Numbered from the stretch's first letter, positions 42,848 to 56,243 are shown. The stretch is 64,000 nucleotides of DNA from Utricularia gibba (GCA_002189035.1 NEEC01000002.1:1302001-1366000); one strand, 5' to 3'. Translations and numbers: made by a program. The notes: generated from the sequence alone by a model not told the origin.

Positions 42848-44137
42848 ATGAAGCACATGGACAGCGCGCCATCGACGCCTGGGAAGTGCAAGATGGAGAA
42901 ATCTTCCTACAAGAGACTGCATTCTTCCCTTGCTAAAACATTTTGGTGTGTGCTTTTTCTGGGTTTGATGTTCGTCTTCTTTTTTAGATCACCCACTTCA
43001 TCGTCCCCTGCCCAATCAGATCTCTCCAGAAGATCCCTTAGGACAACTTCCTATGGAGGTCATAAATTTGAGAGCAAGGTTCAGGCATCAGCTAAGGTAA
43101 GATCAGGTCGCAGAATGTCTGTTTTGGTAACTGGGGCTGCAGGTTTCGTTGGCTCTCATGTCTCGTTAGCTCTCAAACGTAGAGGCGACGGTGTTTTGGG
43201 GCTTGATAATTTCAATGCTTACTATGACCCTTCTTTGAAAAGAGCAAGACAAGCACTCCTGGATCGTAATGGTGTGTACATTGTTGAGGGTGATATAAAT
43301 GATGCTGAGCTATTGAAGAAGCTCTTTGACATTGTGCCGTTTACTCATGTTATGCATCTAGCTGCGCAAGCCGGTGTTCGTTATGCCATGGAGAATCCAA
43401 GCTCCTATGTGCATAGCAACATTGCAGGGCTTGTCAGCTTGCTTGAGGTGTGCAAGAGTGCAAATCCTCAACCTGCAATTGTGTGGGCATCAAGCAGTTC
43501 AGTTTATGGATTGAATAAAAAAGTACCATTTTCAGAAGGGGATAGAACTGACCAGCCGGCAAGCTTGTATGCTGCAACCAAGAAGGCTGGAGAAGAGATT
43601 GCACACACTTACAACCATATTTACGGCCTTTCACTTACTGGTTTAAGGTTCTTCACCGTCTACGGGCCATGGGGGAGGCCGGACATGGCATACTTCTTCT
43701 TCACCAGGGATATTCTGAAGGGTAAAGGCATTCCAATATTTGAGGCTCCAGATCATGGAACTGTTGCTCGGGATTTCACCTACATTGATGATATAGTAAA
43801 GGGCTGTGTGGCTGCTCTTGATACGGCTCAGAGAAGTACTGGTACTGGAGGGAAGAAGAAGGGGCCGGCGCAGCTGAGAGTTTTCAATTTAGGGAACACA
43901 TCTCCGGTTCCGGTTATGGATCTTGTAACCATTCTGGAGAGGCTGCTGAAGGTAAAAGCCAACAGGGTGGTTATGAAGTTGCCAAGAAACGGGGACGTGC
44001 AGTTTACACATGCTAATATAAGTTTGGCTCAGAGAGAGCTTGGTTACAAACCTACAACTGATCTGCAGACAGGATTGAAGAAATTTGTTCAATGGTATCA
44101 CAGTTACTACGTTGAAGGGAAGAAAAATGTGCAGTGA
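42848..44137 (+). CDS. GAE3: UDP-D-glucuronate 4-epimerase (GAE2/3/4 clade), intronless
   Basis: PSTPGK, TM anchor, VLVTGAAGFVG, HLAAQAGVRYA, YAATKK, FFTVYGPWGRPDMAY. Confidence 0.97.
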   Translation: MKHMDSAPSTPGKCKMEKSSYKRLHSSLAKTFWCVLFLGLMFVFFFRSPTSSSPAQSDLSRRSLRTTSYGGHKFESKVQASAKVRSGRRMSVLVTGAAGFVGSHVSLALKRRGDGVLGLDNFNAYYDPSLKRARQALLDRNGVYIVEGDINDAELLKKLFDIVPFTHVMHLAAQAGVRYAMENPSSYVHSNIAGLVSLLEVCKSANPQPAIVWASSSSVYGLNKKVPFSEGDRTDQPASLYAATKKAGEEIAHTYNHIYGLSLTGLRFFTVYGPWGRPDMAYFFFTRDILKGKGIPIFEAPDHGTVARDFTYIDDIVKGCVAALDTAQRSTGTGGKKKGPAQLRVFNLGNTSPVPVMDLVTILERLLKVKANRVVMKLPRNGDVQFTHANISLAQRELGYKPTTDLQTGLKKFVQWYHSYYVEGKKNVQ

Positions 44138-44608
44138 GACTTACTTTTTTTGTCGTTGTCTCCAGATATATTCCTATAACTATTTTTCATCTGTATCCTG
44201 TATTCCCATTCCACGGAAGACACAATCCTTAATACCTCCCTGTATGCTTGTAAGACATGCTCTCTGTTCACTGATTCCATTGCATTCTGTTGTAATTTGA
44301 TCCTTATAGACAGGTTCATTATGGATAGAGAACATTTCATTGTCATTCATGTGTATCAACTGAATTCATTTGAGATCTAAATTCTTGGAATCTTCTCTAG
44401 AAAGCAAGATTGCTGTTCACATGAACGTTTGAAGAATACCATAATGATCATTCATGCTCAGGAGAGCTAGGAAATCAAGGAATCAGTGAAAATTCCAGTC
44501 ATACAAGAGTATGCATGAGGAACTACTTTTACTTGGGATCTGGTTCTAATATGGTGTACAAGGAAAGATGGATTCTTCATTTCGATGCCAAAGCTTTAAT
44601 CTTACCAC

Positions 44609-46316
44609 TCAAAACGGTATGGACTCCCTCTTTGGCCATGATTCTATCTTTTGGAAGTACTTCACAGGCACAACTCCATCAAAACCCTCTGTTAAAATCA
44701 CCCTGTTGTCTGAGATGTAAAGTTTCATCCCCTCTGTTTCAAAACATGAGTCTGTGAATAACAAGTAGACAAAAGAGGCTGTTTTTTTTTTAAGTAATTG
44801 AAGGTCATTTTATACACACTTTACCTTCCAAAGCCTTTCTGACATCCAGAAATATTAACACATTAACATCTCGTCTCATACCTGAATGTACACAGAATAT
44901 AATGTGAGAATGTGTAAAACGCATCAACATTTCTATCGCTTCTTATTGTAGGATATTAACCAACTATTACTTGAATTCATTGCAAGCCAGAAAATTACCA
45001 CTAATAACTTCTCCATCAGTCGGCAAGCCAGATGAGAAGTGTACGTGTAATCTCTTCATGCGCTTGAGACCCTCACGGAGTATGGACTCCAGGCTCCTCT
45101 TATAGGTTCCGTGCGCACAAACTACAGTTGAGGAAAGGATAATGCGAGATATCAAGACTCAGAACCTTCCCTCGAGGGAAAAAAGGATATAGTACTAAGA
45201 ATGGTAAAATTAACCTGGAATGTCTTCAGGTGAGAGTATGGGCCTCAGCAAACTCTCCGTTTCAACAATCTATTGAGGTTTCAACAAGAAAAAAAGATGG
45301 GAAAGATTAGAGTCCCTAATTAAAGATGTTTTATCTAACAGTCAACAGAAAAGGAACAAATAATCCAATGCAGACTCGGCGTAGAAACGGCAAAAGCGAG
45401 TACCTCTACGGTGTGACCTTGATTTGCACGTATCAGAAGCTCTCCGTTTTCTTCCACGAGACTAAACCGCTGCTTGTTATCTTTTCTAACAGCCTACAAG
45501 CAATTCCTAATCAGATTCTCTTAAGCCTCTGAAATAAACTACTACAAGATGAAACTATACCAAATGAGCTTCAGGAGAAAGCATCATTATGCCTCATTGA
45601 GGATTCTTCAACAAACTACTTCATCTAAAACGACTAGCGATTATCACTACAGCTTAAGAATCATGAAAATAACAAGAGCTGCACCTCTTTAACGTCATCA
45701 ACGGTGTGAGACCGAATGGGAATATTGGCGAAGGTCTTTAAGTTCAACTTCAGGAGATCCTGGACATTGACATATCCATCACTCCTCATATTCAATTTCA
45801 ACTCAGAAGCCATATGCCGTAGAACACGTGTCCTGAAATGCTGATCGTGAGAAGCTTACTAATAACAGCCGAAATGCTAACCTGGAACAACTCACAAGAT
45901 AAGAAGTCGTGAAAACAGATAAACTTTCGGTCAATTACCATTCCGCATATCAGAGAAATCAATGAAAGTGGAATGACAGAATTCCATCAGTGCGCGTGAA
46001 ATGGAAAACCACAACACGAGATCAAAACTAATAAATAGTGTAGTGTATACGTACAATAATCTGCCAAGGGCATCAATTTTCTGCGTATCAGAAGAATCTC
46101 CTACACCCCGTCCTCTTGATCTCTGGCGAGTATCTTTAGTCTCAAAACCTCTGCCTCTGCCGCCGCCGGCGCTGCCACATAGAAAACAGGGAACCCGTGT
46201 AAAAGAAAAAAATCCTAACGAGAAAACATGGAAAATTGACGTACGAACCTGCTTCTTGAATGGGCAGAAGCTGCAAAAGTTGATTTTCCGACGGCCGGCA
46301 CATGAAGATTGTCCAT
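44609..46316 (-). CDS. TPT1: tRNA 2'-phosphotransferase (Tpt1/KptA)
   Basis: KIDALGRLL|TRVLRH, DGYVNVQDLL, CAHGTY, GLKRMKRLHVHFSSGLPTDGEVISG, KYFQKIESWP..IPF*. Confidence 0.93.
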
Positions 46317-47119
46317 AAATCCAAATCTAGGAAGAGAGAACACCAGGCGGTTTCGAATTATTCGTAAGCCAGTGCCGGCGAGCATACCCCACGCGCGAAA
46401 ACCGAACCTTTGACTGACTACGGACAGCCGGAGCTTCGCAAAAATTCCACCAAGATAACAATTTTACAGATGTTATATATTCATACCACCGTCCGGTCGC
46501 GTGAGCCGAGGTGAGGTGGACGAAACGAAGAAACCAGATTTTTTAATTAAATTAATTAAAAAAACAAAATTTTGCAGGCTGAGCATTTTTTAAAAGCGAT
46601 AGTGAAGGCAAAATCTTCAGGCCATGCTTCATGTAGGCATAAAGGGATCATGGGGTTGGATCACTCTTAACACAATACCTGTTTGCTATCTTCACTGTAC
46701 TTGGATGCGACTGAGCTCCGGTGCCAAAACTGTATTCGACAGATGATGCTGAAGCCATAGATAAAATCTAAGCCTGCATCTGCAAGCCCCAAATGATGGA
46801 GTGCTGCAGATGGAAGAAGAGCTCCTTGATACAGAGCAGCCTCTGCTCATTGAAAATTGAGCACCGCATCATAAAAACGACAATTAGTTTCAAATGGCAA
46901 GTCCTTTCGGATATGTGCAGAGGGGCCAGGATGGCTGGCTGGACTTCACAAATTACAGAGAAGAAGGTGACCTATGAAGACTGGACTCTGTGCCTAGGGG
47001 TGTAAAAGCATTCTTGTAGTGTATGGCACAAGTTCAAATCATTCCATCCGTGAATTAAGATGAATAATACAAGGGAACTAGAATTACGTTAGAGAGGGAA
47101 CATCAAGATGAGATTACCT

Positions 47120-49056
47120 CTATACAATCCTGCCATTGCGGGATAAACCATTACTGCAATCACCTCCGGCATCAAGCCCACAAGGGGAGTCAAACCATTT
47201 GGGATTTTCATGATAGAAACTATCAACCTGTACAACTGGATCAATCGTTTCATCATGTCTCAAGGGCTTGATGGGATTTTCGGGACTGCCACAACCAAGA
47301 ATGCTTTTCTGATCAAAATCACTATATTTCAGCCACTTCTCCTCTTTGCAGGCCTCACCAAGAAGGTCTCTTTCGTTCCTGCACTCTGTCCTCATTTGAC
47401 CCCAAGATGCAACTTCCCCTAGAGTTCTCCCGAAGCTGTCCTCATCATCTTCGATAACATCCGTTTCCTTGGCGACTCCATATATCCTTGCATGATGATC
47501 ATCACCCCAATCAGACAAATCATGTTCCACTACCAACAGATCCTCTAAATGCTGCTTCTCTGATAACATGCCACTGGATTTCAATCCATCATCCCCAACA
47601 CTTCTTAGCTTATTAGCAATCTCAAACAGTTCACGAGACACTGAACCTAGAAGCGGAGATGGCATTTTGGAAATTCTCTCCTCGAGTAAGCCCAATTCAT
47701 TCCTCAACTCCTGCAGCTGTTGCAGAACTAGATCTGCTGAGTCATTACCGTAAAACCCAAAACCTTCAGTTTCTCCATCTTCTGCCATCCCATACACAGT
47801 CTCATGATCAATTTCGTACCCCCCCTTATGCCCAACCATACGGTGCATTATCCTGGCATTTCCATCCAATGGCCCAGGTTCATGCCCAGAATGCACAGCA
47901 TATAGCTTAAACACGGCTGTTCCTTCCTCCTCATACACAAATGTCTTGTCCTTCTCGTTATAATTTGATATTGGAACTATAGCCCTTATCCGAAATCCAC
48001 ACCCACATCTTTTTGATGTATATGGCTCTCGTTTCAAAATCCGAGACTTCTTTGATGAAGCAGGTTCCCCAGCTCTATGGCAGGCATAGTCCTTTACCTC
48101 GGCCATAAATGGCTTATACCGAATGTACTTTTGTCGGATGCACAGCACAACCTTATGCTTTGCAGCCAATTGTTGCAACTTTCTAGGAACTTCCTTGGCT
48201 GGAACTTCAAGAGACTCAGTATATTCAAACCTCCGTCTCTTGGACCTTGGAGCACATCCAGAAGATTCATCAGAGCAAATCGGGCAAGAAGACAAACATG
48301 TCCTGATATAACTCTCCGGTATTCCATAAAATTTGGCCCCAACTGTCCAAAACTGTTTAATTTTGTCTATGGTTTCTTTCAATCCCAAGTGTTTAAAATC
48401 CGCATCGCTATGGAATGACATAACAATGTCCTGCCACTGATCAATATGGGAAACAAATTGATTGGAATTGTTCTTAAAACATATGTAATGACTGCCGTTA
48501 CCCGTGACATTGGCAGCCTGCTGCGGCACTTGCACAGCCAATTTATCCTGTATGCGCTTCCATGCCGTTAAATAGGCAGTATCCTCATTACGATCCTTCC
48601 ACACAGAGCGCCAGCTGGACAGTAGGGGCGGGGGCGTAGCACCACGAATCTCCTCCGGGTCGCTAATCGGCCCTCAATTAGGCATTGGATCATTAGGGCA
48701 TGCGATTCCTTGTTGAAGGTATAAAATTGGGAAGAAATATGCGGCTCCGGACTAACGCATAGCGTCTGCTGATTCATCAGCCTCTTATTCTGCATCATCA
48801 TGGAGTGATTTGGTAAGCTAGGGTTCTGAAACAGTTCTCCTCCGACCGTCGCCCGGAGAGGGAGCTCGGCATCGGAAGAGTTTGGGCTGACTTCATCATC
48901 CTCTTCATCACGGAGAAGGTCGATCTCAGCCAGGGAGAATGCTTCATCGTCCACTGAGGGATGGGCGTGTGGCTTCGGAGGCACGATGAATTGCTCATGC
49001 GCCTGCGGCGGCCCTAGATGTTGAAAAGGATCATCCTCAATCTTGCTCGGATTCAT
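47120..49056 (-). CDS. Uncharacterised intronless protein with integrase-H2C2-like and FAR1/GCM-like zinc-finger motifs (one -1 frameshift at ~48657)
   Basis: ORFs 48568-49056 and 47120-48604 join if one C is added in ACCCGG (gives LATPEEIRGATPPPLLSSWRSVWKDRNEDTAY). Confidence refers to the gene existing; the domain calls are less certain. Confidence 0.85.
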
Positions 49057-49481
49057 GCTTCCGCCGGTGAATTGTGGAGATGGAGACTCTCAGCTGCCGC
49101 CTGTGGAACTCGCCCCGCGGACTTTCACTCTGAACATAGAGATAGAGAGAGAGAGGATCCGCCGAATCTCTCCGGTCCCAAACCTTTGCTCTTTATATAC
49201 TCCCCTTAATAAATAATAAAAATAATCCTAATAATTTATTTTTCTTGACTATGTTTGCATTTCCACAGAATGAACACTTTTCTTTTGAAAACCAACGCAT
49301 CTTGCTCCGTGGCACTCGAATTCCATGCTATGCGTTATAGCTATGGAGTATGAGGTTGGTGTGATGTAATGTAACAGTAGTGGAATGGAGCAAGTGCTGT
49401 AACGTAAAATTTCGGCTTCTCTGAAGTTTTTAACGCGTGCGTTTTCATCGGGGCGACGAAAAGGTGAGATTTTTTGTGACA

Positions 49482-51926
49482 ATGGGATTGATTTCTGGGA
49501 TTGTAATGGGGACGCTGTTTGGGATCGCGATAGTGATAACCTGGGCGCACATGATGAGCTACCGCGCCAACAAGAGAATCACCAAGGTCTGGTCTTGATT
49601 CACGATCGTTTCAATTTCCGAATGCGAAAATGATTCTTGGTTCGCAGATTAGAGCCCTGCGATCAGATTGAATTTGGGTGTTCGTATTTGTGTTGGCAGG
49701 CGGTAGATATTAAGCTGTTGAGCACATTGAACAGGGATGATATCAAGAAACTGTGTGGAGATAACTTCCCAGACTGGATATCGTTCCCAGTTTTTGAACA
49801 GGTATTTTATTTGACTGTGTCTATACATATTGGCGTTGATGTTGCAAATGAAGATGCGGTATCTTCATATTTTACGTTCATTTGGGGAAGTGTTTTTGTT
49901 TCACTTGGTAAAATGGGAGAAGAATGCAATGCCTGTTTAAGATTTCTGAATAATGAGTGGATCTTTTTCCTGTTGGTTTTAGTTTTATCTATGCTTATGC
50001 ATCCAATTTTCAGGTGAAGTGGTTGAACAAGCATCTGAGCAAACTATGGCCGTATATCGCAGATGTATGCTCTGTCTTTTCCCCTACATTGTCTGGCTCA
50101 GTGTCGAAGTCATTTTCTTTTTACTAGGCAGGGGAAGCAATAATAAAGGAGACTGTGGAGCCATTGTTGGAAGACTATCGGCCTCCTGGGATCACTTCAC
50201 TCAAGTTCAGTAAATTGTCTTTAGGAACCGTGGCTCCAAAAATTGAGGGTTCGCCATTTGCTTCACATGTTTATGCAGCTATCTGTTTCTCTGCTTCACA
50301 ATTTAAAGTTTTTATCACAGGAATCAGAGTCCAGAGTCTGAAGGAAGGCCAAATAACTATGGATATTGATCTCCGATGGGGTGGAGATCCGAGCATTATC
50401 CTAGGTGTTGAAGCAGCACTTGTTGCATCGATTCCCATTCAAGTTAGCTCTGGTTTCCTTATCTTCCTTCACCTCTCAAGCTATTGATTGTTCAGTGGAA
50501 GCTTACTCAGCACCCTTGTTTTCAGTTGAAAGATCTCCAAGTTTTTACTGTCGTCCGCACAATTTTCCAGCTCACAGATGAAATCCCCTGCATCTCTGCA
50601 ATTGTCGTGGCTCTCCTTGCAGAGGTAGTGTTTTACAAGCTCTTAAAATGTTCCTGCTTCTGATCTGAAGTCTACTTATTGTACTGGTCCTGGCCATTCA
50701 GCCGAAACCGAGAATAGATTACACCCTTAAAGCTGTAGGTGGAAGTTTAACAGCACTTCCTGGAATCTCAGACATGATAGATGTAAGATTCTTCCCTTCT
50801 CGTAATCGCAGCTATGCAATGATACTGAATGGGAAATGACCCGTTTTCAGGACACAGTTAACTCGATCATTACAGATGCACTGCAATGGCCACACCGGAT
50901 TGTGGTTCCAATCGGTGGAACGCCTGTAGATACAAGGTCTCGCTTTTCTTACTGGAATAGCCTTTCCTTTTGTTGAAGAAGTTGCTTTTCTTTAAACTGG
51001 TAACAAAACCTGCAGCGAGCTAGAGCTGAAGCCCGAGGGAAGCTGACGGTGACGGTGGTGAAAGCAAGTGCCCTGAAAAACATGGAGTTTATCGGAAAAT
51101 CGGATCCCTACGTGACGCTGCACATCCGTCCAATCTTTAAAATGACAACACGGGTGTTGGACGATAACCTGAACCCTGTCTGGAACGAGACCTTCGAGCT
51201 CATCGCAGAAGACAAAGAGACCCAGTCTCTGATTCTCGAGGTTCCCTTTTTGTTCTTTTGTGGAAATTCAATGTCGGATTTCCTGCAACTTCTCCCTCAT
51301 TGTCGAATAATCAATCAGGTTCTGGACGAGGATATAGGACAAGATAAACGGTTAGGCATAGCTAAGTTGCCTCTGGCAGAGCTTGAACCTGAATCCTCAA
51401 AGGAAATCGAGCTCCGGCTTCTTCCCTCACTGAATATGCTTATGATCAAGGACAAGAAGGATCGTGGGACTCTAACGATTCAGGTAAGGAATGATACTTG
51501 TAGTGGTCGACAATGTTCGAGTAGTACAATTTGTATGTCATGGCAGATACTCTTTTGCAGGTGTTTTACCACCAGTTCAACAAAGAAGAGCAGCTGGCTG
51601 CGCTGGAGGATGAGAAGCGGACTTTAGAGGAACGAAAGAAGCTAAAGGAATCAGGGGCAATCGGCAGTACGACGGACGCTGTTGATGGAGCAGTTTCCAT
51701 GGCTGGCTCCGGCGCTGGTTTAGTGGGTAGCGGAATTGGCGCCGGAGTTGGCCTCGTCGGGAGTGGCCTCGGAGCTGTCGGCAGTGGGATCAGCAAAGCC
51801 GGTAAGTTCATGGGACGCACAATTACCGGACACGCAAGTGCATCGCGGAGGAGGGTCAATTCTACCTCCGCCGCGGATCATTTGGTTTCGGAAAACGGCG
51901 TCGACATGCCTCGCCCATCCGCTTGA
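49482..51926 (+). CDS. SYT7: Synaptotagmin-like SMP-C2 protein (SYT7/CLB1/NTMC2T4); one -1 frameshift at ~51038
   Basis: MGLISGIVMG.., FPDWISFP, VKWLNK, SKLSLGTVAPKIEG, LQWPHRIVVP, GKSDPYV, NLNPVWNETF, Gly-rich C-terminus; ~11 exons. Confidence 0.94.
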
Positions 51927-52080
51927 AGCGCGGTTTCTTGAAAATCAAGAACCTCTTAGTTGAAACTATTTCCACGAAAGTTTCCCATGATACTTTTGGG
52001 TGAATTCAGTGACATCGGAGACGACATTAAAAAAGAAAGAGCACAAAGAACAGAGCATGCAGACATCTGCAGGGTTGCTG

Positions 52081-53401
52081 CTATTCCCTGTCCTGAATCC
52101 ATGCCACGAAGGCTCGAAGTGTTTCTTCGTCTGCTCGATGATGTTTCTGGGTGAATTCCAACAACTCCGGCCAGGTAAAATCAGGGTACATTCGTGGATT
52201 CTCTTCTGAGACAAGGCATGTCGGTGGGCAGACAAGCCGTTCTCTGCTCGGACAGAGGAAAAAAGCCACAGACTTCCTTGAAGCATCGCTGTTCACCACG
52301 GCTCTATGCAAGCATCCCTTGTAAACTCCATTCGACAGCGCCTGCAAAACATTCGGACTGAGTTCAGTTTTATCACAAGACGGAAGCAGTTTCTTGATGC
52401 GATGACGAAGTTACAGTGAAAGTATCCCCGATGTTGACGACGAAGTCTCGAGGGTTTGGAGGAATAGATCGCCATTGTCCATCTACGAACACTTCCAGCC
52501 CGGGGACATGATCCTGATGGAGAACCGTGACGGCGGTCGGGTCGCAATGTGGGCCGGTCCCCATAGTGAGCTCCGGCGCCGGACAACTGGGGTAGTGATT
52601 GAATCTAATGATGGAGTCATGATCCTGAAAGAATTCCTTGAAATACTCAGCTCCCACCCCCAAGCTCTCCCCAAGAACCCCAACACTTTCAGACAGAGAC
52701 CGTAAACAGCGTCCCCGTACTTCTGCAACGTCCTCCTATTGCACCCATGAATCAATTGAACACGTTATCACTTTCGCATGCACACAGCCATTGAATTGAG
52801 CTCAGTGTAGGGTTAGAGGAATTTCTGGGCGTTCGTGCTTATGAAAGTTTAATTCAAAAAAGCATTTTGTACCCAAATGCAGCATAAGGATGGTGTTCAT
52901 CTTTCTCCATCACTTCCATGAAAAACTTTTCCAGATCGCCCTCCACTGTGTGGCGAAACGTCAGCGTTTCCTTCCACGGAAGCTTAGTCTCGAATCGGCC
53001 GATGAAGGCACTCGAATAGCCATCCCGGGCGCCCGGTTGCCTTGTAGCCCGCCTTTTCTCCTCCATCGGCAGTTGCATGAACATGTCAATGCCACGGTGC
53101 ACCTCCTCCACCAGCTTCATATCGAAACCATGGTTCACCACAACGAAGAAACCATGGTGACGGCACGCCTGGTCCACCACCCTCGCCGCCGCGTGGTCGA
53201 AGTTCTGCAGGTCGACCTGCGGGACGTCCAGCGGTGGAGGTGGAACGGGGCCGCGTCTGTAGCTCTCCGGCCATACGAATTGGCCGGAGGCGGTGAAGGG
53301 GGGTGTCTGAGAGAGCATTTTTCGGGATGATGAAGTGCGACGGAGATAACTTCAATGTCTAAAGAGGAGTGGAAGTTCAGGTTTCCCATGTGTCGTCGCA
53401 T
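52081..53401 (-). CDS. GA20ox: Gibberellin 20-oxidase (2OGD), 3 exons; -1 frameshift at ~52670 and uncertain start
   Basis: QFVWP, HGFFVVVNHG, LPWKET, FNHYP, GPHCDPT (HxD), VVNIGDTF, LSNGVYKGCLHRAVVN, RKS, YPDFTW. Confidence 0.9.
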
Positions 53402-54689: not shown

Positions 54690-56243
54690 ATGGCATACCC
54701 TATTCGAACCCCATCAAAATTGTCTCCATCTTCTTCTTCTCCCAAGTTCATTTCAATAACGCTGTGCAAATTTCTCCATTCACCTCTGCCTTCTCCCTGC
54801 AAGACTACTCCTAGGTTTCCCTTGTGTTGCCAATCCCCAAGACAACAATACTCTTCAACAGCTTCAGATTCGGCCCTCTTGTCGTTTTTTCGAGCAATCC
54901 CGGATTGGGCTGATGGGGTGAAGGAGAGGGGAATGAAACAGAAAAGGGTCTTGTATGATCATGAAAAATGGCTTGAGCACAGGAGCTCCACCAGACATTT
55001 GAGGCATCTCCTTAACAGCTTGAGTTCCAGAGTAATTTTGTCATTGGTTCCACCGGTGATCGTTTGTACTTTCTTGGCTGTAGTGATTGCGAGTTATAAT
55101 TCTGCGGTATCCACACATTGGTTGCCTGAGTTCTTCCCTACTCTGAGATCCTCTTCTCTGCCTTATCAGCTCACAGCCCCCGCCTTGGCTTTGCTATTGG
55201 TTTTTAGGACGGAGGCATCATATTCCAGATTCGATGAAGCGAGAAAAATTTGGTCCAGGATTACTGCAGGAGCCAATGATTTAGCTACACAAGTTATTGT
55301 CATCTCCGAAAGTCCAGCTGATGAGAAACTCAGAAGGGTCATCTTGAAGTATATTGCGGCTTTCCCAGTTGCACTCAAGGTTCGTTCAGCTTTACCCCTT
55401 TATGTTGAATATGTGAAAGGAAAGGTTCCATACTGATAGCTTCTCGTTTGCAATGCAGTGCCACATCATTTATGGCTTAGATATTGCAAAGGATCTTCAA
55501 GGTATACTTGAAACTGATGATCTAGCCATGGTTCTCCAATCAAAGCATCGCCCTCGTTTTATCATCGAGTTCATTGCTCAAAGCCTAAACATGCTTGATG
55601 TGGAGGCCCCAAAGCTCAATGTGCTGGTACCTTTCTTCCCATGAAGCATCCATAACCTTGAGCATAGCCCATCTGTTAAAGATTGTACCTATCCGCTTGC
55701 TTCCATTTGCATTCCTCTTGAGCTGCGGGCATCTTCTTCCACTTGCAGGAATCAAAGCTAACCTGCTTCCACGAAGGAATCGAGACATGTGAGCAGCTTA
55801 TAGGCATACCCATCCCTCTATCCTACACCCGTTTGACATCAAGAATTTTAGTTCTCTGGCATTGCACCCTCCCAGTTGTCCTGTGGGATGAGTGCCACTG
55901 GATCGTCGTTCCTGCTACTCTCATTAGTTCTGCGGTCTTATTCGGCATAGAGGAGGTAAAACCACATCTAACTAAACCTACAGCTCTCTCCCCAACATCT
56001 TGAGCTTACTGTAAACCCAAAGCATGATGTTTCCAGGTGGGGGTCCTCATAGAAGAGCCTTTCCCAATGCTTCCTCTTGATGAAATCTGCCAAGGGGTTC
56101 TCAGAAATGTGGATGAGACTCTCGGGAACGGTAAGGTGATCAGAGAACATGTCAGAAACAAGTCCCTGCGCCTGCACCGTCGTCATCATCCTCCACTCAA
56201 CGGCCGCCGGAGCTCTTCTCCTCTCCAAGATTCACATGGCTGA
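54690..56243 (+). CDS. VCCN1: Bestrophin-like thylakoid chloride channel (UPF0187; VCCN1/Best1-like), 4 exons
   Basis: Transit peptide, IPDWAD, HRSSTRH, LLLVFRTEASYSRF, KHRP, PIPLSYTRLTSR, IEEVGVLIEEPF. Confidence 0.94.

What the first reader, a model, noticed from the sequence alone, without database searches (positions are those of the whole stretch)
47120..49056. Candidate domesticated-transposon transcription factor combining integrase H2C2 and FAR1/WRKY-GCM1 zinc fingers
Seen: at 48412-48275, IVMSFHSDADFKHLGLKETIDKIKQFW..YGIPESYIRTCLSSCPIC, an H-x6-H-x34-C-x2-C pattern with the H.G..T signature. It is followed by a basic NLS (PRSKRRR). At 48088-47882, IRQKY..YACHRAG..SKRCGCGFRIRA..HSGH. 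Then a coiled coil and an acidic tail. There is no DDE core, no terminal repeats and no TSD, and it sits head-to-head with SYT7. Known: the first pattern resembles the Gypsy-type integrase zinc-binding domain (Integrase_H2C2). The second resembles the C.R.G..R.gC..H..H fold of FAR1/Mutator and WRKY-GCM1 DNA-binding domains. Inference: a host gene built from retrotransposon-like and DNA-transposon-like modules, possibly an unrecognised sequence-specific regulator or TE-surveillance factor.
Basis: inference. Interest (0 to 1): 0.8.

Follow-up and report, generated by a model that had tools for sequence, protein, structure and literature searches.

The report
Ancient transposase-derived zinc-finger gene (At3g60850 family)
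This is an intact, intron-free plant gene found across vascular plants: a Mutator-like transposase that lost its cutting domain but kept two zinc-binding DNA-recognition modules, so it is most likely a nuclear DNA-binding regulator whose function nobody has yet studied.

Summary
The two ORFs (49056-48568 and 48604-47120, minus strand) are one intronless gene of about 645 codons. The frame break is one base missing from the assembly: contigs from three other studies of the same organism carry the extra base.

The gene is the orthologue of Arabidopsis At3g60850, an unnamed family:
- one or two copies per species, 67-82% identical across eudicots;
- 63% identical in the core to Selaginella and Diphasiastrum;
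- core dN/dS of 0.03-0.055.

Both proposed folds are supported, each only moderately. The evidence is recurrent sub-threshold Pfam hits (Integrase_H2C2, FAR1, AFT), conserved metal ligands, and an AlphaFold model (pLDDT 85.6). Its best structural matches are foamy-virus and Ty3 integrase N-termini, and WRKY and AFT2 domains (Z 5.4-6.5).

The "two-source chimera" idea is not supported. The whole N-terminal module sits in front of a MULE DDE core and a SWIM finger in fern and lycophyte proteins. In Adiantum these are multi-copy at 94-98% identity. The gene is therefore a single, very old domestication of one MULE lineage that lost the catalytic core.

I found no paper on this family. DNA binding and any regulatory role are inferred, not shown.

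The parts
47120..49056 (-). Whole gene: one intronless coding sequence of about 645 codons (ATG at 49056, stop at 47122-47120). The window reads it as two ORFs because one base is missing.
   Evidence: (colinear with 600-680 aa homologues).
48656..48659 (-). Frame break. The window has CCC where other runs have CCCC (ACC CCG), or ACA CCG in a second form. Both forms read ...GRLATPEEIR... in frame.
   Evidence: G put in behind 48656 in X1, X7, X9; T behind 48658 in a variant contig; X4 has a hole at 48638-48658; translations.
48751..49056 (-). Poorly conserved, acidic N-terminal region (net charge -12 over the first 100 residues), probably disordered.
   Evidence: dN/dS is highest here (0.14-0.34).
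48413..48750 (-). Conserved helical region (PEPHISSQFYTFN... to QWQDIVMSF) that precedes the HHCC. In the model it aligns, together with the HHCC part, to the N-terminal extension plus N-terminal domain of foamy-virus and Ty3 integrases.
   Evidence: (4bac_A Z 6.5, 87 residues, model 17-164; 7q5b_A Z 5.4, 104 residues).
48275..48412 (-). HHCC zinc-binding module, H-x6-H-x34-C-x2-C, with the HLG..T signature.
   Evidence: coordinates; ligands kept in 72/74, 69/76, 74/78 and 74/78 sequences; Pfam Integrase_H2C2 at E<=0.1 in 26 of 80 family members, best 1.1e-5; one distant member passes Pfam's cut-off.
48230..48250 (-). Basic stretch PRSKRRR, a likely nuclear localisation signal. KRRR is invariant in 15 angiosperm sequences.
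   Evidence: function inferred from composition only.
47882..48229 (-). WRKY-GCM1-type zinc finger of the insert-containing (FAR1/AFT) kind: a helix plus a beta-sheet, with ligands C(HRAG), (CG)C, H-x2-H.
   Evidence: model; WRKY33 Z 6.5, AFT2 Z 6.3 at 22% identity, WRKY1 Z 5.9, GCM Z 4.2; WRKY18 and RRS1 WRKY are the best Foldseek rows, not significant; ligands 52/58, 41/47, 33/37, 35/37; (FAR1 in 8 of 80 members, AFT in 3 of 80).
47672..47725 (-). Leucine-rich heptad-like stretch (LQQLQELRNELGLLEERI), conserved as far as Selaginella. Possible coiled coil or interaction helix.
   Evidence: not modelled.
47123..47749 (-). Acidic C-terminal half (net charge -20) ending in a conserved motif (QVDSFY..NPKW.DSPCGLD..DC...). 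No detectable similarity to the MULE core.
   Evidence: (hhalign probability 0.2%).

Best explanation
The locus is an intact, intronless host gene, the orthologue of Arabidopsis At3g60850. It descends from the N-terminal, DNA-recognising part of a Mutator-like (MULE) transposase.

That ancestral transposase lineage still exists with its DDE core and SWIM finger in ferns and lycophytes. Its N-terminus is unusual: an integrase-like helical region plus an HHCC zinc module, followed by a FAR1/AFT-type WRKY-GCM1 zinc finger. The domesticated gene lost the DDE core and the SWIM finger before lycophytes and seed plants diverged. It has since been kept at one or two copies per genome under strong purifying selection.

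Inferred mechanism, not shown:
- the KRRR stretch takes the protein to the nucleus;
- the WRKY-GCM1 finger reads a specific DNA motif through its beta-sheet;
- the HHCC module adds DNA contacts or self-association, as it does in integrases;
- the acidic C-terminal half, with its conserved helix and end motif, recruits partners or activates transcription.

In short, it would act as a transposase-derived transcription or chromatin factor, in the manner of the FRS-RELATED FACTOR (FRF) proteins.
For: Intact gene:
- Contigs from three other studies carry the missing base, and a second form is also in frame.

Host gene:
- 351 homologues, typically one or two per species, 67-82% identical across eudicots.
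- The Salvia, Paulownia and Sesamum orthologues are intronless. Sesamum and Paulownia share the neighbours LOB and PCC.
- dN/dS is 0.07-0.15 overall and 0.03-0.055 in the core.
- There are no repeats around the gene and no DDE domain.

Age:
- Selaginella P0123 is colinear with the angiosperm protein to the C-terminal motif (46% identity, E 3e-160) and 63% identical in the core. Diphasiastrum P0128 is also 63%.

Folds:
- Integrase_H2C2, FAR1 and AFT are the only Pfam families that recur among 80 members.
- One distant member, P0190, passes the H2C2 cut-off (26.0 vs 25.5 bits).
- The metal ligands are conserved.
- The model has pLDDT 85.6. Its top structural matches are the PFV integrase N-terminus, WRKY33, AFT2, WRKY1 and Ty3 integrase.
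- ESM Atlas neighbours include GIN1, FAR1-RELATED SEQUENCE and MULE+AFT clusters. Foamy-virus Pol is top in BFVD.

MULE origin:
- The family profile hits Adiantum P0174 (E 4e-12) and Selaginella P0135 (E 1e-37) over the N-module.
- P0174 has a Pfam MULE domain above threshold (36.5 vs 27.6 bits). Its C-terminus aligns to the C-terminal region of P0135 and P0173 that carries the C-x-C...C-x-H motif, which I read as SWIM by eye (P0135 is named SWIM-type in UniRef).
- P0174 aligns with P0135 over 633 residues (E 2e-99).
- Adiantum holds about 15 copies at 94-98% identity on different contigs. Two copies share 3.8 kb at 96% identity, flanked by inverted arrays of a GTAAACTCGGG motif.
Against: - Fold matches are only moderate: Z 5.4-6.5, which the tool itself calls a middling range. 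No Foldseek E-value is below 0.02.
- The window's own protein scores 13 bits against Integrase_H2C2 (cut-off 25.5) and does not hit FAR1 or AFT at all.
- A profile search of PDB sequences found nothing.
- DNA binding, zinc binding, nuclear localisation and any regulatory role are untested.
- Transcription is only suggested, by contigs of runs guessed to be RNA.
- The C-terminal half has no detectable relative, so how the protein acts after binding is unknown.
- The direction of evolution (loss of the DDE core, rather than a MULE capturing a host N-module) is inferred from parsimony, not from a rooted tree.
- The window copy shares no neighbours with the three Lamiales loci I fetched.
Confidence: 0.7

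Rival explanations
1. The zinc modules no longer read DNA. The protein would be an adaptor that uses the HHCC and WRKY-like folds for protein or RNA contacts, for example in chromatin or silencing complexes, as some other plant transposon-derived genes do.
For: No DNA-binding data exist. The most conserved part includes long invariant stretches outside the ligand positions. The acidic C-terminal half and its conserved end motif look like interaction surfaces. One structural neighbour of the WRKY-like part is a non-DNA-binding subunit of the KICSTOR complex (Z 6.1).
Against: Every characterised WRKY-GCM1 domain among the top matches (WRKY, AFT2, GCM, FAR1) binds DNA. The domain is basic (net +7 over residues 111-285 of the second ORF) and sits next to a basic nuclear signal.
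Confidence: 0.15
2. One reading: a chimeric host gene assembled from two sources, a Ty3/gypsy integrase zinc finger and a separate Mutator/FAR1 DNA-binding domain.
For: The HHCC module is closest in sequence and shape to retroelement integrases. The second module is closest to MULE, FAR1 and AFT fingers. A capture of an integrase N-terminus by an early MULE remains possible for the deeper history.
Against: Both modules, in the same order and with the same linker helix, are found in front of a MULE core in fern and lycophyte proteins that match the family profile at E 1e-12 to 1e-37. The combination therefore predates the host gene and was not made by it.
Confidence: 0.1
3. A decaying pseudogene, or an ordinary, possibly still mobile, Mutator-like element.
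For: The window sequence has a frameshift. Distant relatives in Adiantum are multi-copy elements.
Against: The frameshift is absent from contigs of three other studies, and the remaining 494-codon frame has no further defect. Core dN/dS is 0.03-0.055. There is no DDE domain and no terminal or flanking repeats. There are one or two copies per species.
Confidence: 0.04

Closest known systems
FAR1/FHY3 and the FRS-RELATED FACTOR (FRF) proteins of plants (MULE-derived transcription factors)
   Same: Derived from a Mutator-like transposase. The N-terminal DNA-binding finger is of the insert-containing WRKY-GCM1 type. FRFs likewise keep only the DNA-binding part and lack the MULE core and the SWIM finger. 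They are host genes under selection.
   Different: FAR1/FRS/FRF have no HHCC module in front of the finger. The window protein does not hit Pfam FAR1 at all; only 8 of 80 family members do, below threshold. It comes from a different MULE lineage, has an unrelated acidic C-terminal half, and is kept at one or two copies instead of a large family.
GIN1 (gypsy retrotransposon integrase-like 1) of vertebrates and the N-terminal extension + HHCC domain of Ty3 and foamy-virus integrases
   Same: HHCC zinc module with the H..GH.G..T...W...C..C signature and a preceding helical region. Structural neighbours in three libraries.
   Different: GIN1 and integrases carry an rve (DDE) core after the HHCC. 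Here the HHCC is followed by a WRKY-GCM1 finger, and in the fern and lycophyte relatives by a MULE-type core rather than rve.
Fungal Aft1/Aft2/Rcs1 iron-responsive transcription factors (Pfam AFT)
   Same: Best single-domain structural match with sequence signal: AFT2-DNA complex 4lmg, Z 6.3, 22% identity over 72 residues. A WRKY-GCM1 finger with a long insert between the first two ligands.
   Different: No HHCC module, a different kingdom, and no detectable homology outside the finger.
MUSTANG (MUG) genes of angiosperms
   Same: Domesticated MULE transposases conserved as host genes.
   Different: MUG proteins keep the MULE core and SWIM finger. This family lost them and is much older, already present in lycophytes.

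Membership tests
Integrase_H2C2 (Pfam PF17921) / integrase HHCC N-terminal domain | H-x(3-7)-H-x(23-35)-C-x2-C ligand pattern, conserved | tested here: met
   H-x6-H-x34-C-x2-C at 48412-48275. Ligands kept in 72/74, 69/76, 74/78 and 74/78 sequences.
Integrase_H2C2 (Pfam PF17921) / integrase HHCC N-terminal domain | Score above Pfam's gathering cut-off (25.5 bits) | tested here: not met
   The window protein scores 13.0 bits, E 0.11. 26 of 80 family members score at E<=0.1. Only the distant member P0190 passes, at 26.0 bits.
Integrase_H2C2 (Pfam PF17921) / integrase HHCC N-terminal domain | Helical HHCC fold like solved integrase N-terminal domains | tested here: inconclusive
   PFV integrase 4bac_A is rank 1 (Z 6.5, rmsd 2.7, 87 residues) and Ty3 integrase has Z 5.4. 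Foamy-virus Pol is top in BFVD at probability 0.96 but E 0.02. These Z values are in the range the tool calls middling.
Integrase_H2C2 (Pfam PF17921) / integrase HHCC N-terminal domain | Followed by an rve-type catalytic core | tested here: not met
   No rve hit in any member.
WRKY-GCM1 superfamily, insert-containing FAR1/AFT/MULE type | C...C...H-x(1-2)-H ligands on a four-stranded sheet | tested here: met
   C, C, H-x2-H kept in 52/58, 41/47, 33/37 and 35/37 sequences. The model has the sheet. WRKY33 Z 6.5, AFT2 Z 6.3, WRKY1 Z 5.9, WRKY4 Z 4.3, GCM Z 4.2.
WRKY-GCM1 superfamily, insert-containing FAR1/AFT/MULE type | Pfam FAR1 (28.1 bits) or AFT (21.6 bits) cut-off | tested here: not met
   Best FAR1 E 0.0016 (8 of 80 members) and best AFT E 0.0013 (3 of 80). 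P0174 scores 17.9 bits for AFT and 14.2 for FAR1. The window protein has no hit.
Autonomous Mutator-like element (MULE) | DDE transposase core (Pfam MULE PF10551) and SWIM finger | tested here: not met
   Absent from the window protein and all angiosperm members. Its C-terminal half is unrelated to the core. A MULE core is present in the fern relative P0174 at 36.5 bits.
Autonomous Mutator-like element (MULE) | Terminal inverted repeats, target-site duplication, many copies | tested here: not met
   No repeats of 20 nt or more in 44000-52000. One or two copies per species.
Domesticated (exapted) transposase gene | Low copy number, orthologues across deep lineages, purifying selection, loss of mobility features | tested here: met
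   angiosperms through Selaginella; core dN/dS 0.03-0.055; shared neighbours in Sesamum and Paulownia.
Domesticated (exapted) transposase gene | Expressed, and with a phenotype | not testable with these tools
   Contigs of runs guessed to be RNA cover the gene. No paper mentions At3g60850.

The most novel reading that the evidence does not exclude
The At3g60850 family would be the DDE-less survivor of an undescribed Mutator-like clade whose transposases carry a retroelement-integrase-type N-terminus (helical extension + HHCC) fused to a WRKY-GCM1 finger. It would have been domesticated before lycophytes and seed plants diverged and kept almost unchanged since, making it one of the oldest and most conserved transposase-derived DNA-binding regulators in land plants, with no function yet assigned.
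Probability: 0.5. Interest if true: 0.65.

Novelty: new variant of a known kind. Interest (0 to 1): 0.55.

Why it matters
Plants have a handful of well-studied transposase-derived regulators (FHY3/FAR1, MUSTANG, DAYSLEEPER, ALP1, HDP). This family appears to be another one.

It is older and more conserved than most of them: 63% core identity between Selaginella and Sesamum, and core dN/dS of about 0.03-0.05. It is low-copy, so a knockout should be informative.

Its architecture joins an integrase-type HHCC module to a MULE-type WRKY-GCM1 finger. That links two DNA-recognition modules usually assigned to different classes of mobile elements. The related fern elements, still multi-copy, offer a living model of the ancestor.

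It is directly testable in Arabidopsis through At3g60850.

Tried and rejected
- First structure prediction, with 15 close homologues: poor (pLDDT 53.5). It was replaced by an 80-sequence alignment.
- Profile search of PDB sequences: no hit even at E 10.
- Foldseek against PDB and BFVD: nothing below E 0.02. The right families top the lists but are not significant.
- C-terminal half: no Pfam hit, no ESM Atlas feature hit, and no profile similarity to the MULE core region (hhalign probability 0.2%).
- Synteny of the window copy with the Salvia, Paulownia and Sesamum loci: no shared neighbours within 8-10 kb. Synteny is therefore shown only between Sesamum and Paulownia.
- dS between the window gene and other Lamiales is saturated (about 2), so only the dN/dS values among the other three species are reliable.
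- Pfam on short exons of the upstream neighbour gave nothing. The SYT-like call rests on reading the C2 exon.
- Exact ends and target-site duplication of the Adiantum element could not be fixed, because of tandem subterminal repeats.
- Literature: no paper holds At3g60850; none joins Integrase_H2C2 with FAR1 or MULE; the gene is not in the two held supplements of the 2021 FAR1 survey or in the text of the WRKY-GCM1 natural-history paper. The Hoen and Bureau 2015 list of exapted TE genes is not held, so I could not check whether the gene is listed there.
- Complex prediction was not used: I make no binding claim.
- Pseudogene and active-transposon readings were considered and rejected (see rival explanations).

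Full report
**Observation.** On the minus strand, two ORFs in different frames cover 49056-48568 (162 aa) and 48604-47120 (494 aa).
- H-x6-H-x34-C-x2-C at 48412-48275;
- PRSKRRR at 48250-48230;
- YACHRAG...KRCGCGFRIRA...HSGH at 48088-47882;
- a leucine-rich heptad-like stretch at 47725-47672;
- an acidic C-terminal half, net charge -20 over 208 residues.

Pfam finds no DDE domain. There are no direct or inverted repeats of 20 nt or more in 44000-52000.

The divergent upstream neighbour starts about 400 bp away. It contains a C2-domain exon (51049-) typical of plant synaptotagmin-like genes (read directly, as Pfam on short exons was silent).

**The frame break is an assembly fault.**
- Full-length homologues of 600-680 aa run straight through the junction as ...IEGRLATPEEIR...SWRSVWKDRNED.
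- I laid contigs of four public runs of the same organism on 47000-49300. Contigs from three independent studies are identical to the window (X1, X7 and X9 over the break; X1 elsewhere too) but carry one more G behind plus-strand 48656. That gives CCCC instead of CCC on the coding strand.
- A second contig form, with 9 listed substitutions (10-12 differing letters per contig) confined to roughly 48548-48658, has a T behind 48658.
- Both forms translate in frame, as GRLATPEEIRGATPPPLL... and GRLATPEEIRAATPPAVL....
- The 2013 DNA run has a hole exactly at 48638-48658.

The window therefore lost a base inside a small two-form bubble (alleles or paralogues). The gene is a single intact, intronless coding sequence of about 645 codons.

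Contigs of runs guessed to be RNA cover the gene and stop near 47013, about 105 nt past the stop codon. This suggests transcription but does not prove it.

**A conserved host gene.**
- The 494-aa part finds 351 proteins at E<=1e-3. The best 120 are 67-82% identical and cover eudicots from Lamiales to Nelumbo, typically one or two per species. They are named 'uncharacterized', sometimes 'Transposase' or 'Integrase zinc-binding domain-containing', and once 'like AT3G60850'.
- The ESM Atlas cluster closest in shape to the model is itself named At3g60850.
- The Salvia, Paulownia and Sesamum orthologues are intronless. The Sesamum and Paulownia loci share the same neighbours (LOB upstream, PCC downstream). 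The window copy shares none of these.
- Nei-Gojobori dN/dS among those three species is 0.07-0.15 for the whole gene and 0.03-0.055 for the core. Against the window gene, dS is saturated (about 2) and dN is 0.11-0.13.
- The family is much older than angiosperms. Selaginella P0123 (515 aa) and P0124, and Diphasiastrum P0128, are 63% identical to Sesamum in the core. P0123 is colinear with the angiosperm protein through the heptad-like helix to the C-terminal motif (E 3e-160).

**The two zinc modules.**
- *Sequence.* The window protein gives only 13 bits against Integrase_H2C2 (cut-off 25.5). I then scanned 80 family members one by one. The only Pfam families that recur are Integrase_H2C2 (26 members, best E 1.1e-5), FAR1 (8, best 0.0016) and AFT (3, best 0.0013). 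Every other family is a singleton. One distant member, P0190, passes the Integrase_H2C2 cut-off at 26.0 bits.
- *Ligands.* In the same alignment, which reaches down to 20-30% identity, the HHCC ligands are kept in 72/74, 69/76, 74/78 and 74/78 sequences. The second cluster (C, C, H-x2-H) is kept in 52/58, 41/47, 33/37 and 35/37.
- *Structure.* A first AlphaFold run on 15 close sequences failed (pLDDT 53.5). With the 80-sequence alignment, the model of the Sesamum orthologue's core (90% identical to the window's) reached pLDDT 85.6.
- *Exhaustive structural search of 48,161 PDB representatives.* For model residues 17-164: rank 1 is the prototype foamy virus integrase N-terminus (Z 6.5, rmsd 2.7, 87 residues; chain 8-100, which I take from general knowledge of that integrase to be its N-terminal extension plus HHCC domains), and Ty3 integrase has Z 5.4. 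For residues 175-296: WRKY33 Z 6.5, the AFT2-DNA complex Z 6.3 at 22% identity, WRKY1 Z 5.9, further WRKY domains, and GCM Z 4.2.
- *Other libraries.* Foldseek puts WRKY18 and the RRS1 WRKY domain on top in PDB, and foamy-virus Pol on top in BFVD, but without significant E-values. The Atlas shape search returns GIN1 clusters (Integrase_H2C2 in 98-100% of members), FAR1-RELATED SEQUENCE clusters and MULE+AFT clusters.

Each line is moderate on its own. The 25-27 residues between the first two ligands of the second module place it in the insert-containing FAR1/AFT/MULE branch of the WRKY-GCM1 superfamily, as that branch is defined in PMC1702500.

**Origin.**
- A profile of the core searched against 1.84 billion representative proteins found only 105 hits. 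This is a narrow family, not a large transposon family.
- Beyond the orthologues, the hits are fern and lycophyte proteins of 670-1200 aa.
- Adiantum P0174 has the same N-module at residues 43-310, followed by a Pfam MULE transposase domain above threshold (36.5 vs 27.6 bits). I read a SWIM-like C-x-C...C-x-H motif at its C-terminus.
- P0174 aligns with Selaginella P0135 (named SWIM-type domain-containing) over 633 residues (E 2e-99), and with Selaginella P0173 at 40% identity over the core.
- P0173 and P0174 keep the DSTF / IDKS / WVE positions, read from the alignments, while P0135 has lost the two aspartates.
- In Adiantum nelumboides the family is multi-copy: about 15 proteins at 94-98% identity on different contigs. 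Two loci share 3.8 kb at 96% identity. The shared block is flanked by arrays of a GTAAACTCGGG motif in opposite orientation. These are the marks of a recently active DNA transposon.

The N-module (integrase-like helices + HHCC + WRKY-GCM1 finger) is thus the N-terminus of one MULE lineage. The host gene is most simply explained as that transposase without its catalytic core and SWIM finger.

The C-terminal half of the host protein shows no similarity to the MULE core (hhalign probability 0.2%) or to anything else.

**How it probably works (inference).** By analogy with WRKY, AFT2, GCM and FAR1, the finger should read a specific DNA motif with its beta-sheet. By analogy with integrases, the HHCC module should add DNA contacts or drive self-association. 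The invariant KRRR stretch should direct nuclear import. The acidic C-terminal half, with its conserved helix and end motif, should bind partners or activate transcription. None of this was tested, and no paper in the held library mentions At3g60850.

**Comparison with known families.** The gene works like, but is not a member of, the FAR1/FRS/FRF family. It has the same superfamily of finger, the same MULE origin, and the same loss of core and SWIM as in FRFs. It differs in three ways: an additional HHCC module, no FAR1 Pfam match, and a different MULE lineage. It is not an integrase or a GIN1 relative in the family sense, because there is no rve core and the Pfam cut-off is not met. It fails every test for an autonomous MULE.

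**Novelty and caveats.** I found no description of a MULE lineage with an integrase-type HHCC N-terminus, or of this host family. However, the main published list of exapted Arabidopsis TE genes is not held and could not be checked. The gene's existence is already recorded in databases.

What is new is its nature, its age and its source. I rate it a new variant of a known kind (a domesticated transposase), of moderate interest.

Noticed in passing
window 48548-48658: Runs of the same organism hold two forms of this short stretch. They differ by 9 listed substitutions (10-12 differing letters per contig), and both are in frame (GATPPPLL vs AATPPAVL). They are either alleles or a second, near-identical paralogue. 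The window's missing base sits at the edge of this bubble.
   Followed up: partly
L002 7700-7952 and 11500-12000; L005 7718-12327 (Adiantum nelumboides): A multi-copy MULE-type element: 3.8 kb shared at 96% identity between two loci. Several direct GTAAACTCGGG motifs lie at one end and ten or more inverted copies (CCCGAGTTTAC or CCCAAGTTTAC) at the other. Exact termini and target-site duplication were not resolved.
   Followed up: partly
P0135 (Selaginella moellendorffii, 928 aa): A full-length MULE-type relative that keeps the SWIM finger but has lost the first two catalytic aspartates (VVSRLL and VIEKS where relatives have IDSTF and VIDKS). It may be a second, independent domestication in lycophytes.
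   Followed up: no
P0224 (Nematostella vectensis), P0190 (IMG metagenome): Weak hits to the N-module outside plants. P0190 has helices + HHCC + the start of the CHRG finger and passes Pfam's Integrase_H2C2 cut-off. P0224 matches only the helical + HHCC part, at E about 1e-3. The module may be wider than land plants.
   Followed up: no
model mec290f6a5f89 (ESM Atlas search): Two animal clusters are closer in shape than the GIN1 clusters: chordate NOL4 (Pfam HTH_NOL4_2nd, TM 0.44 over 186 residues) and an arthropod 'genetic suppressor element-like' cluster (TM 0.42). A shared origin was not examined.
   Followed up: no
L003 and L004; P0089: In Sesamum and Paulownia the orthologue lies between a LOB-domain gene and a PCC (AT-hook PPC) gene. 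The Hibiscus syriacus homologue is named 'LOB domain-containing protein 31-like'. I did not check whether this name reflects a neighbouring LOB gene.
   Followed up: no
window 47120-49056 vs L001, L003, L004: The window lineage is fast-evolving. dS to the three other Lamiales is about 2, against 0.4-0.8 among them. The window gene also has small deletions in the C-terminal half. Genes in this window are tightly packed.
   Followed up: partly
window 42848-44137 (+), 45661-45813 (-), 52081-53318 (-), 54690-55436 (+): Neighbouring genes. There is an intronless NAD-dependent epimerase (Pfam Epimerase, E 1e-51) and an exon of an RNA 2'-phosphotransferase (Tpt1/KptA, sub-threshold: 23.3 bits vs cut-off 26). 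Read by eye, there are also a 2-oxoglutarate-dioxygenase-like gene and a bestrophin-like membrane protein.
   Followed up: partly
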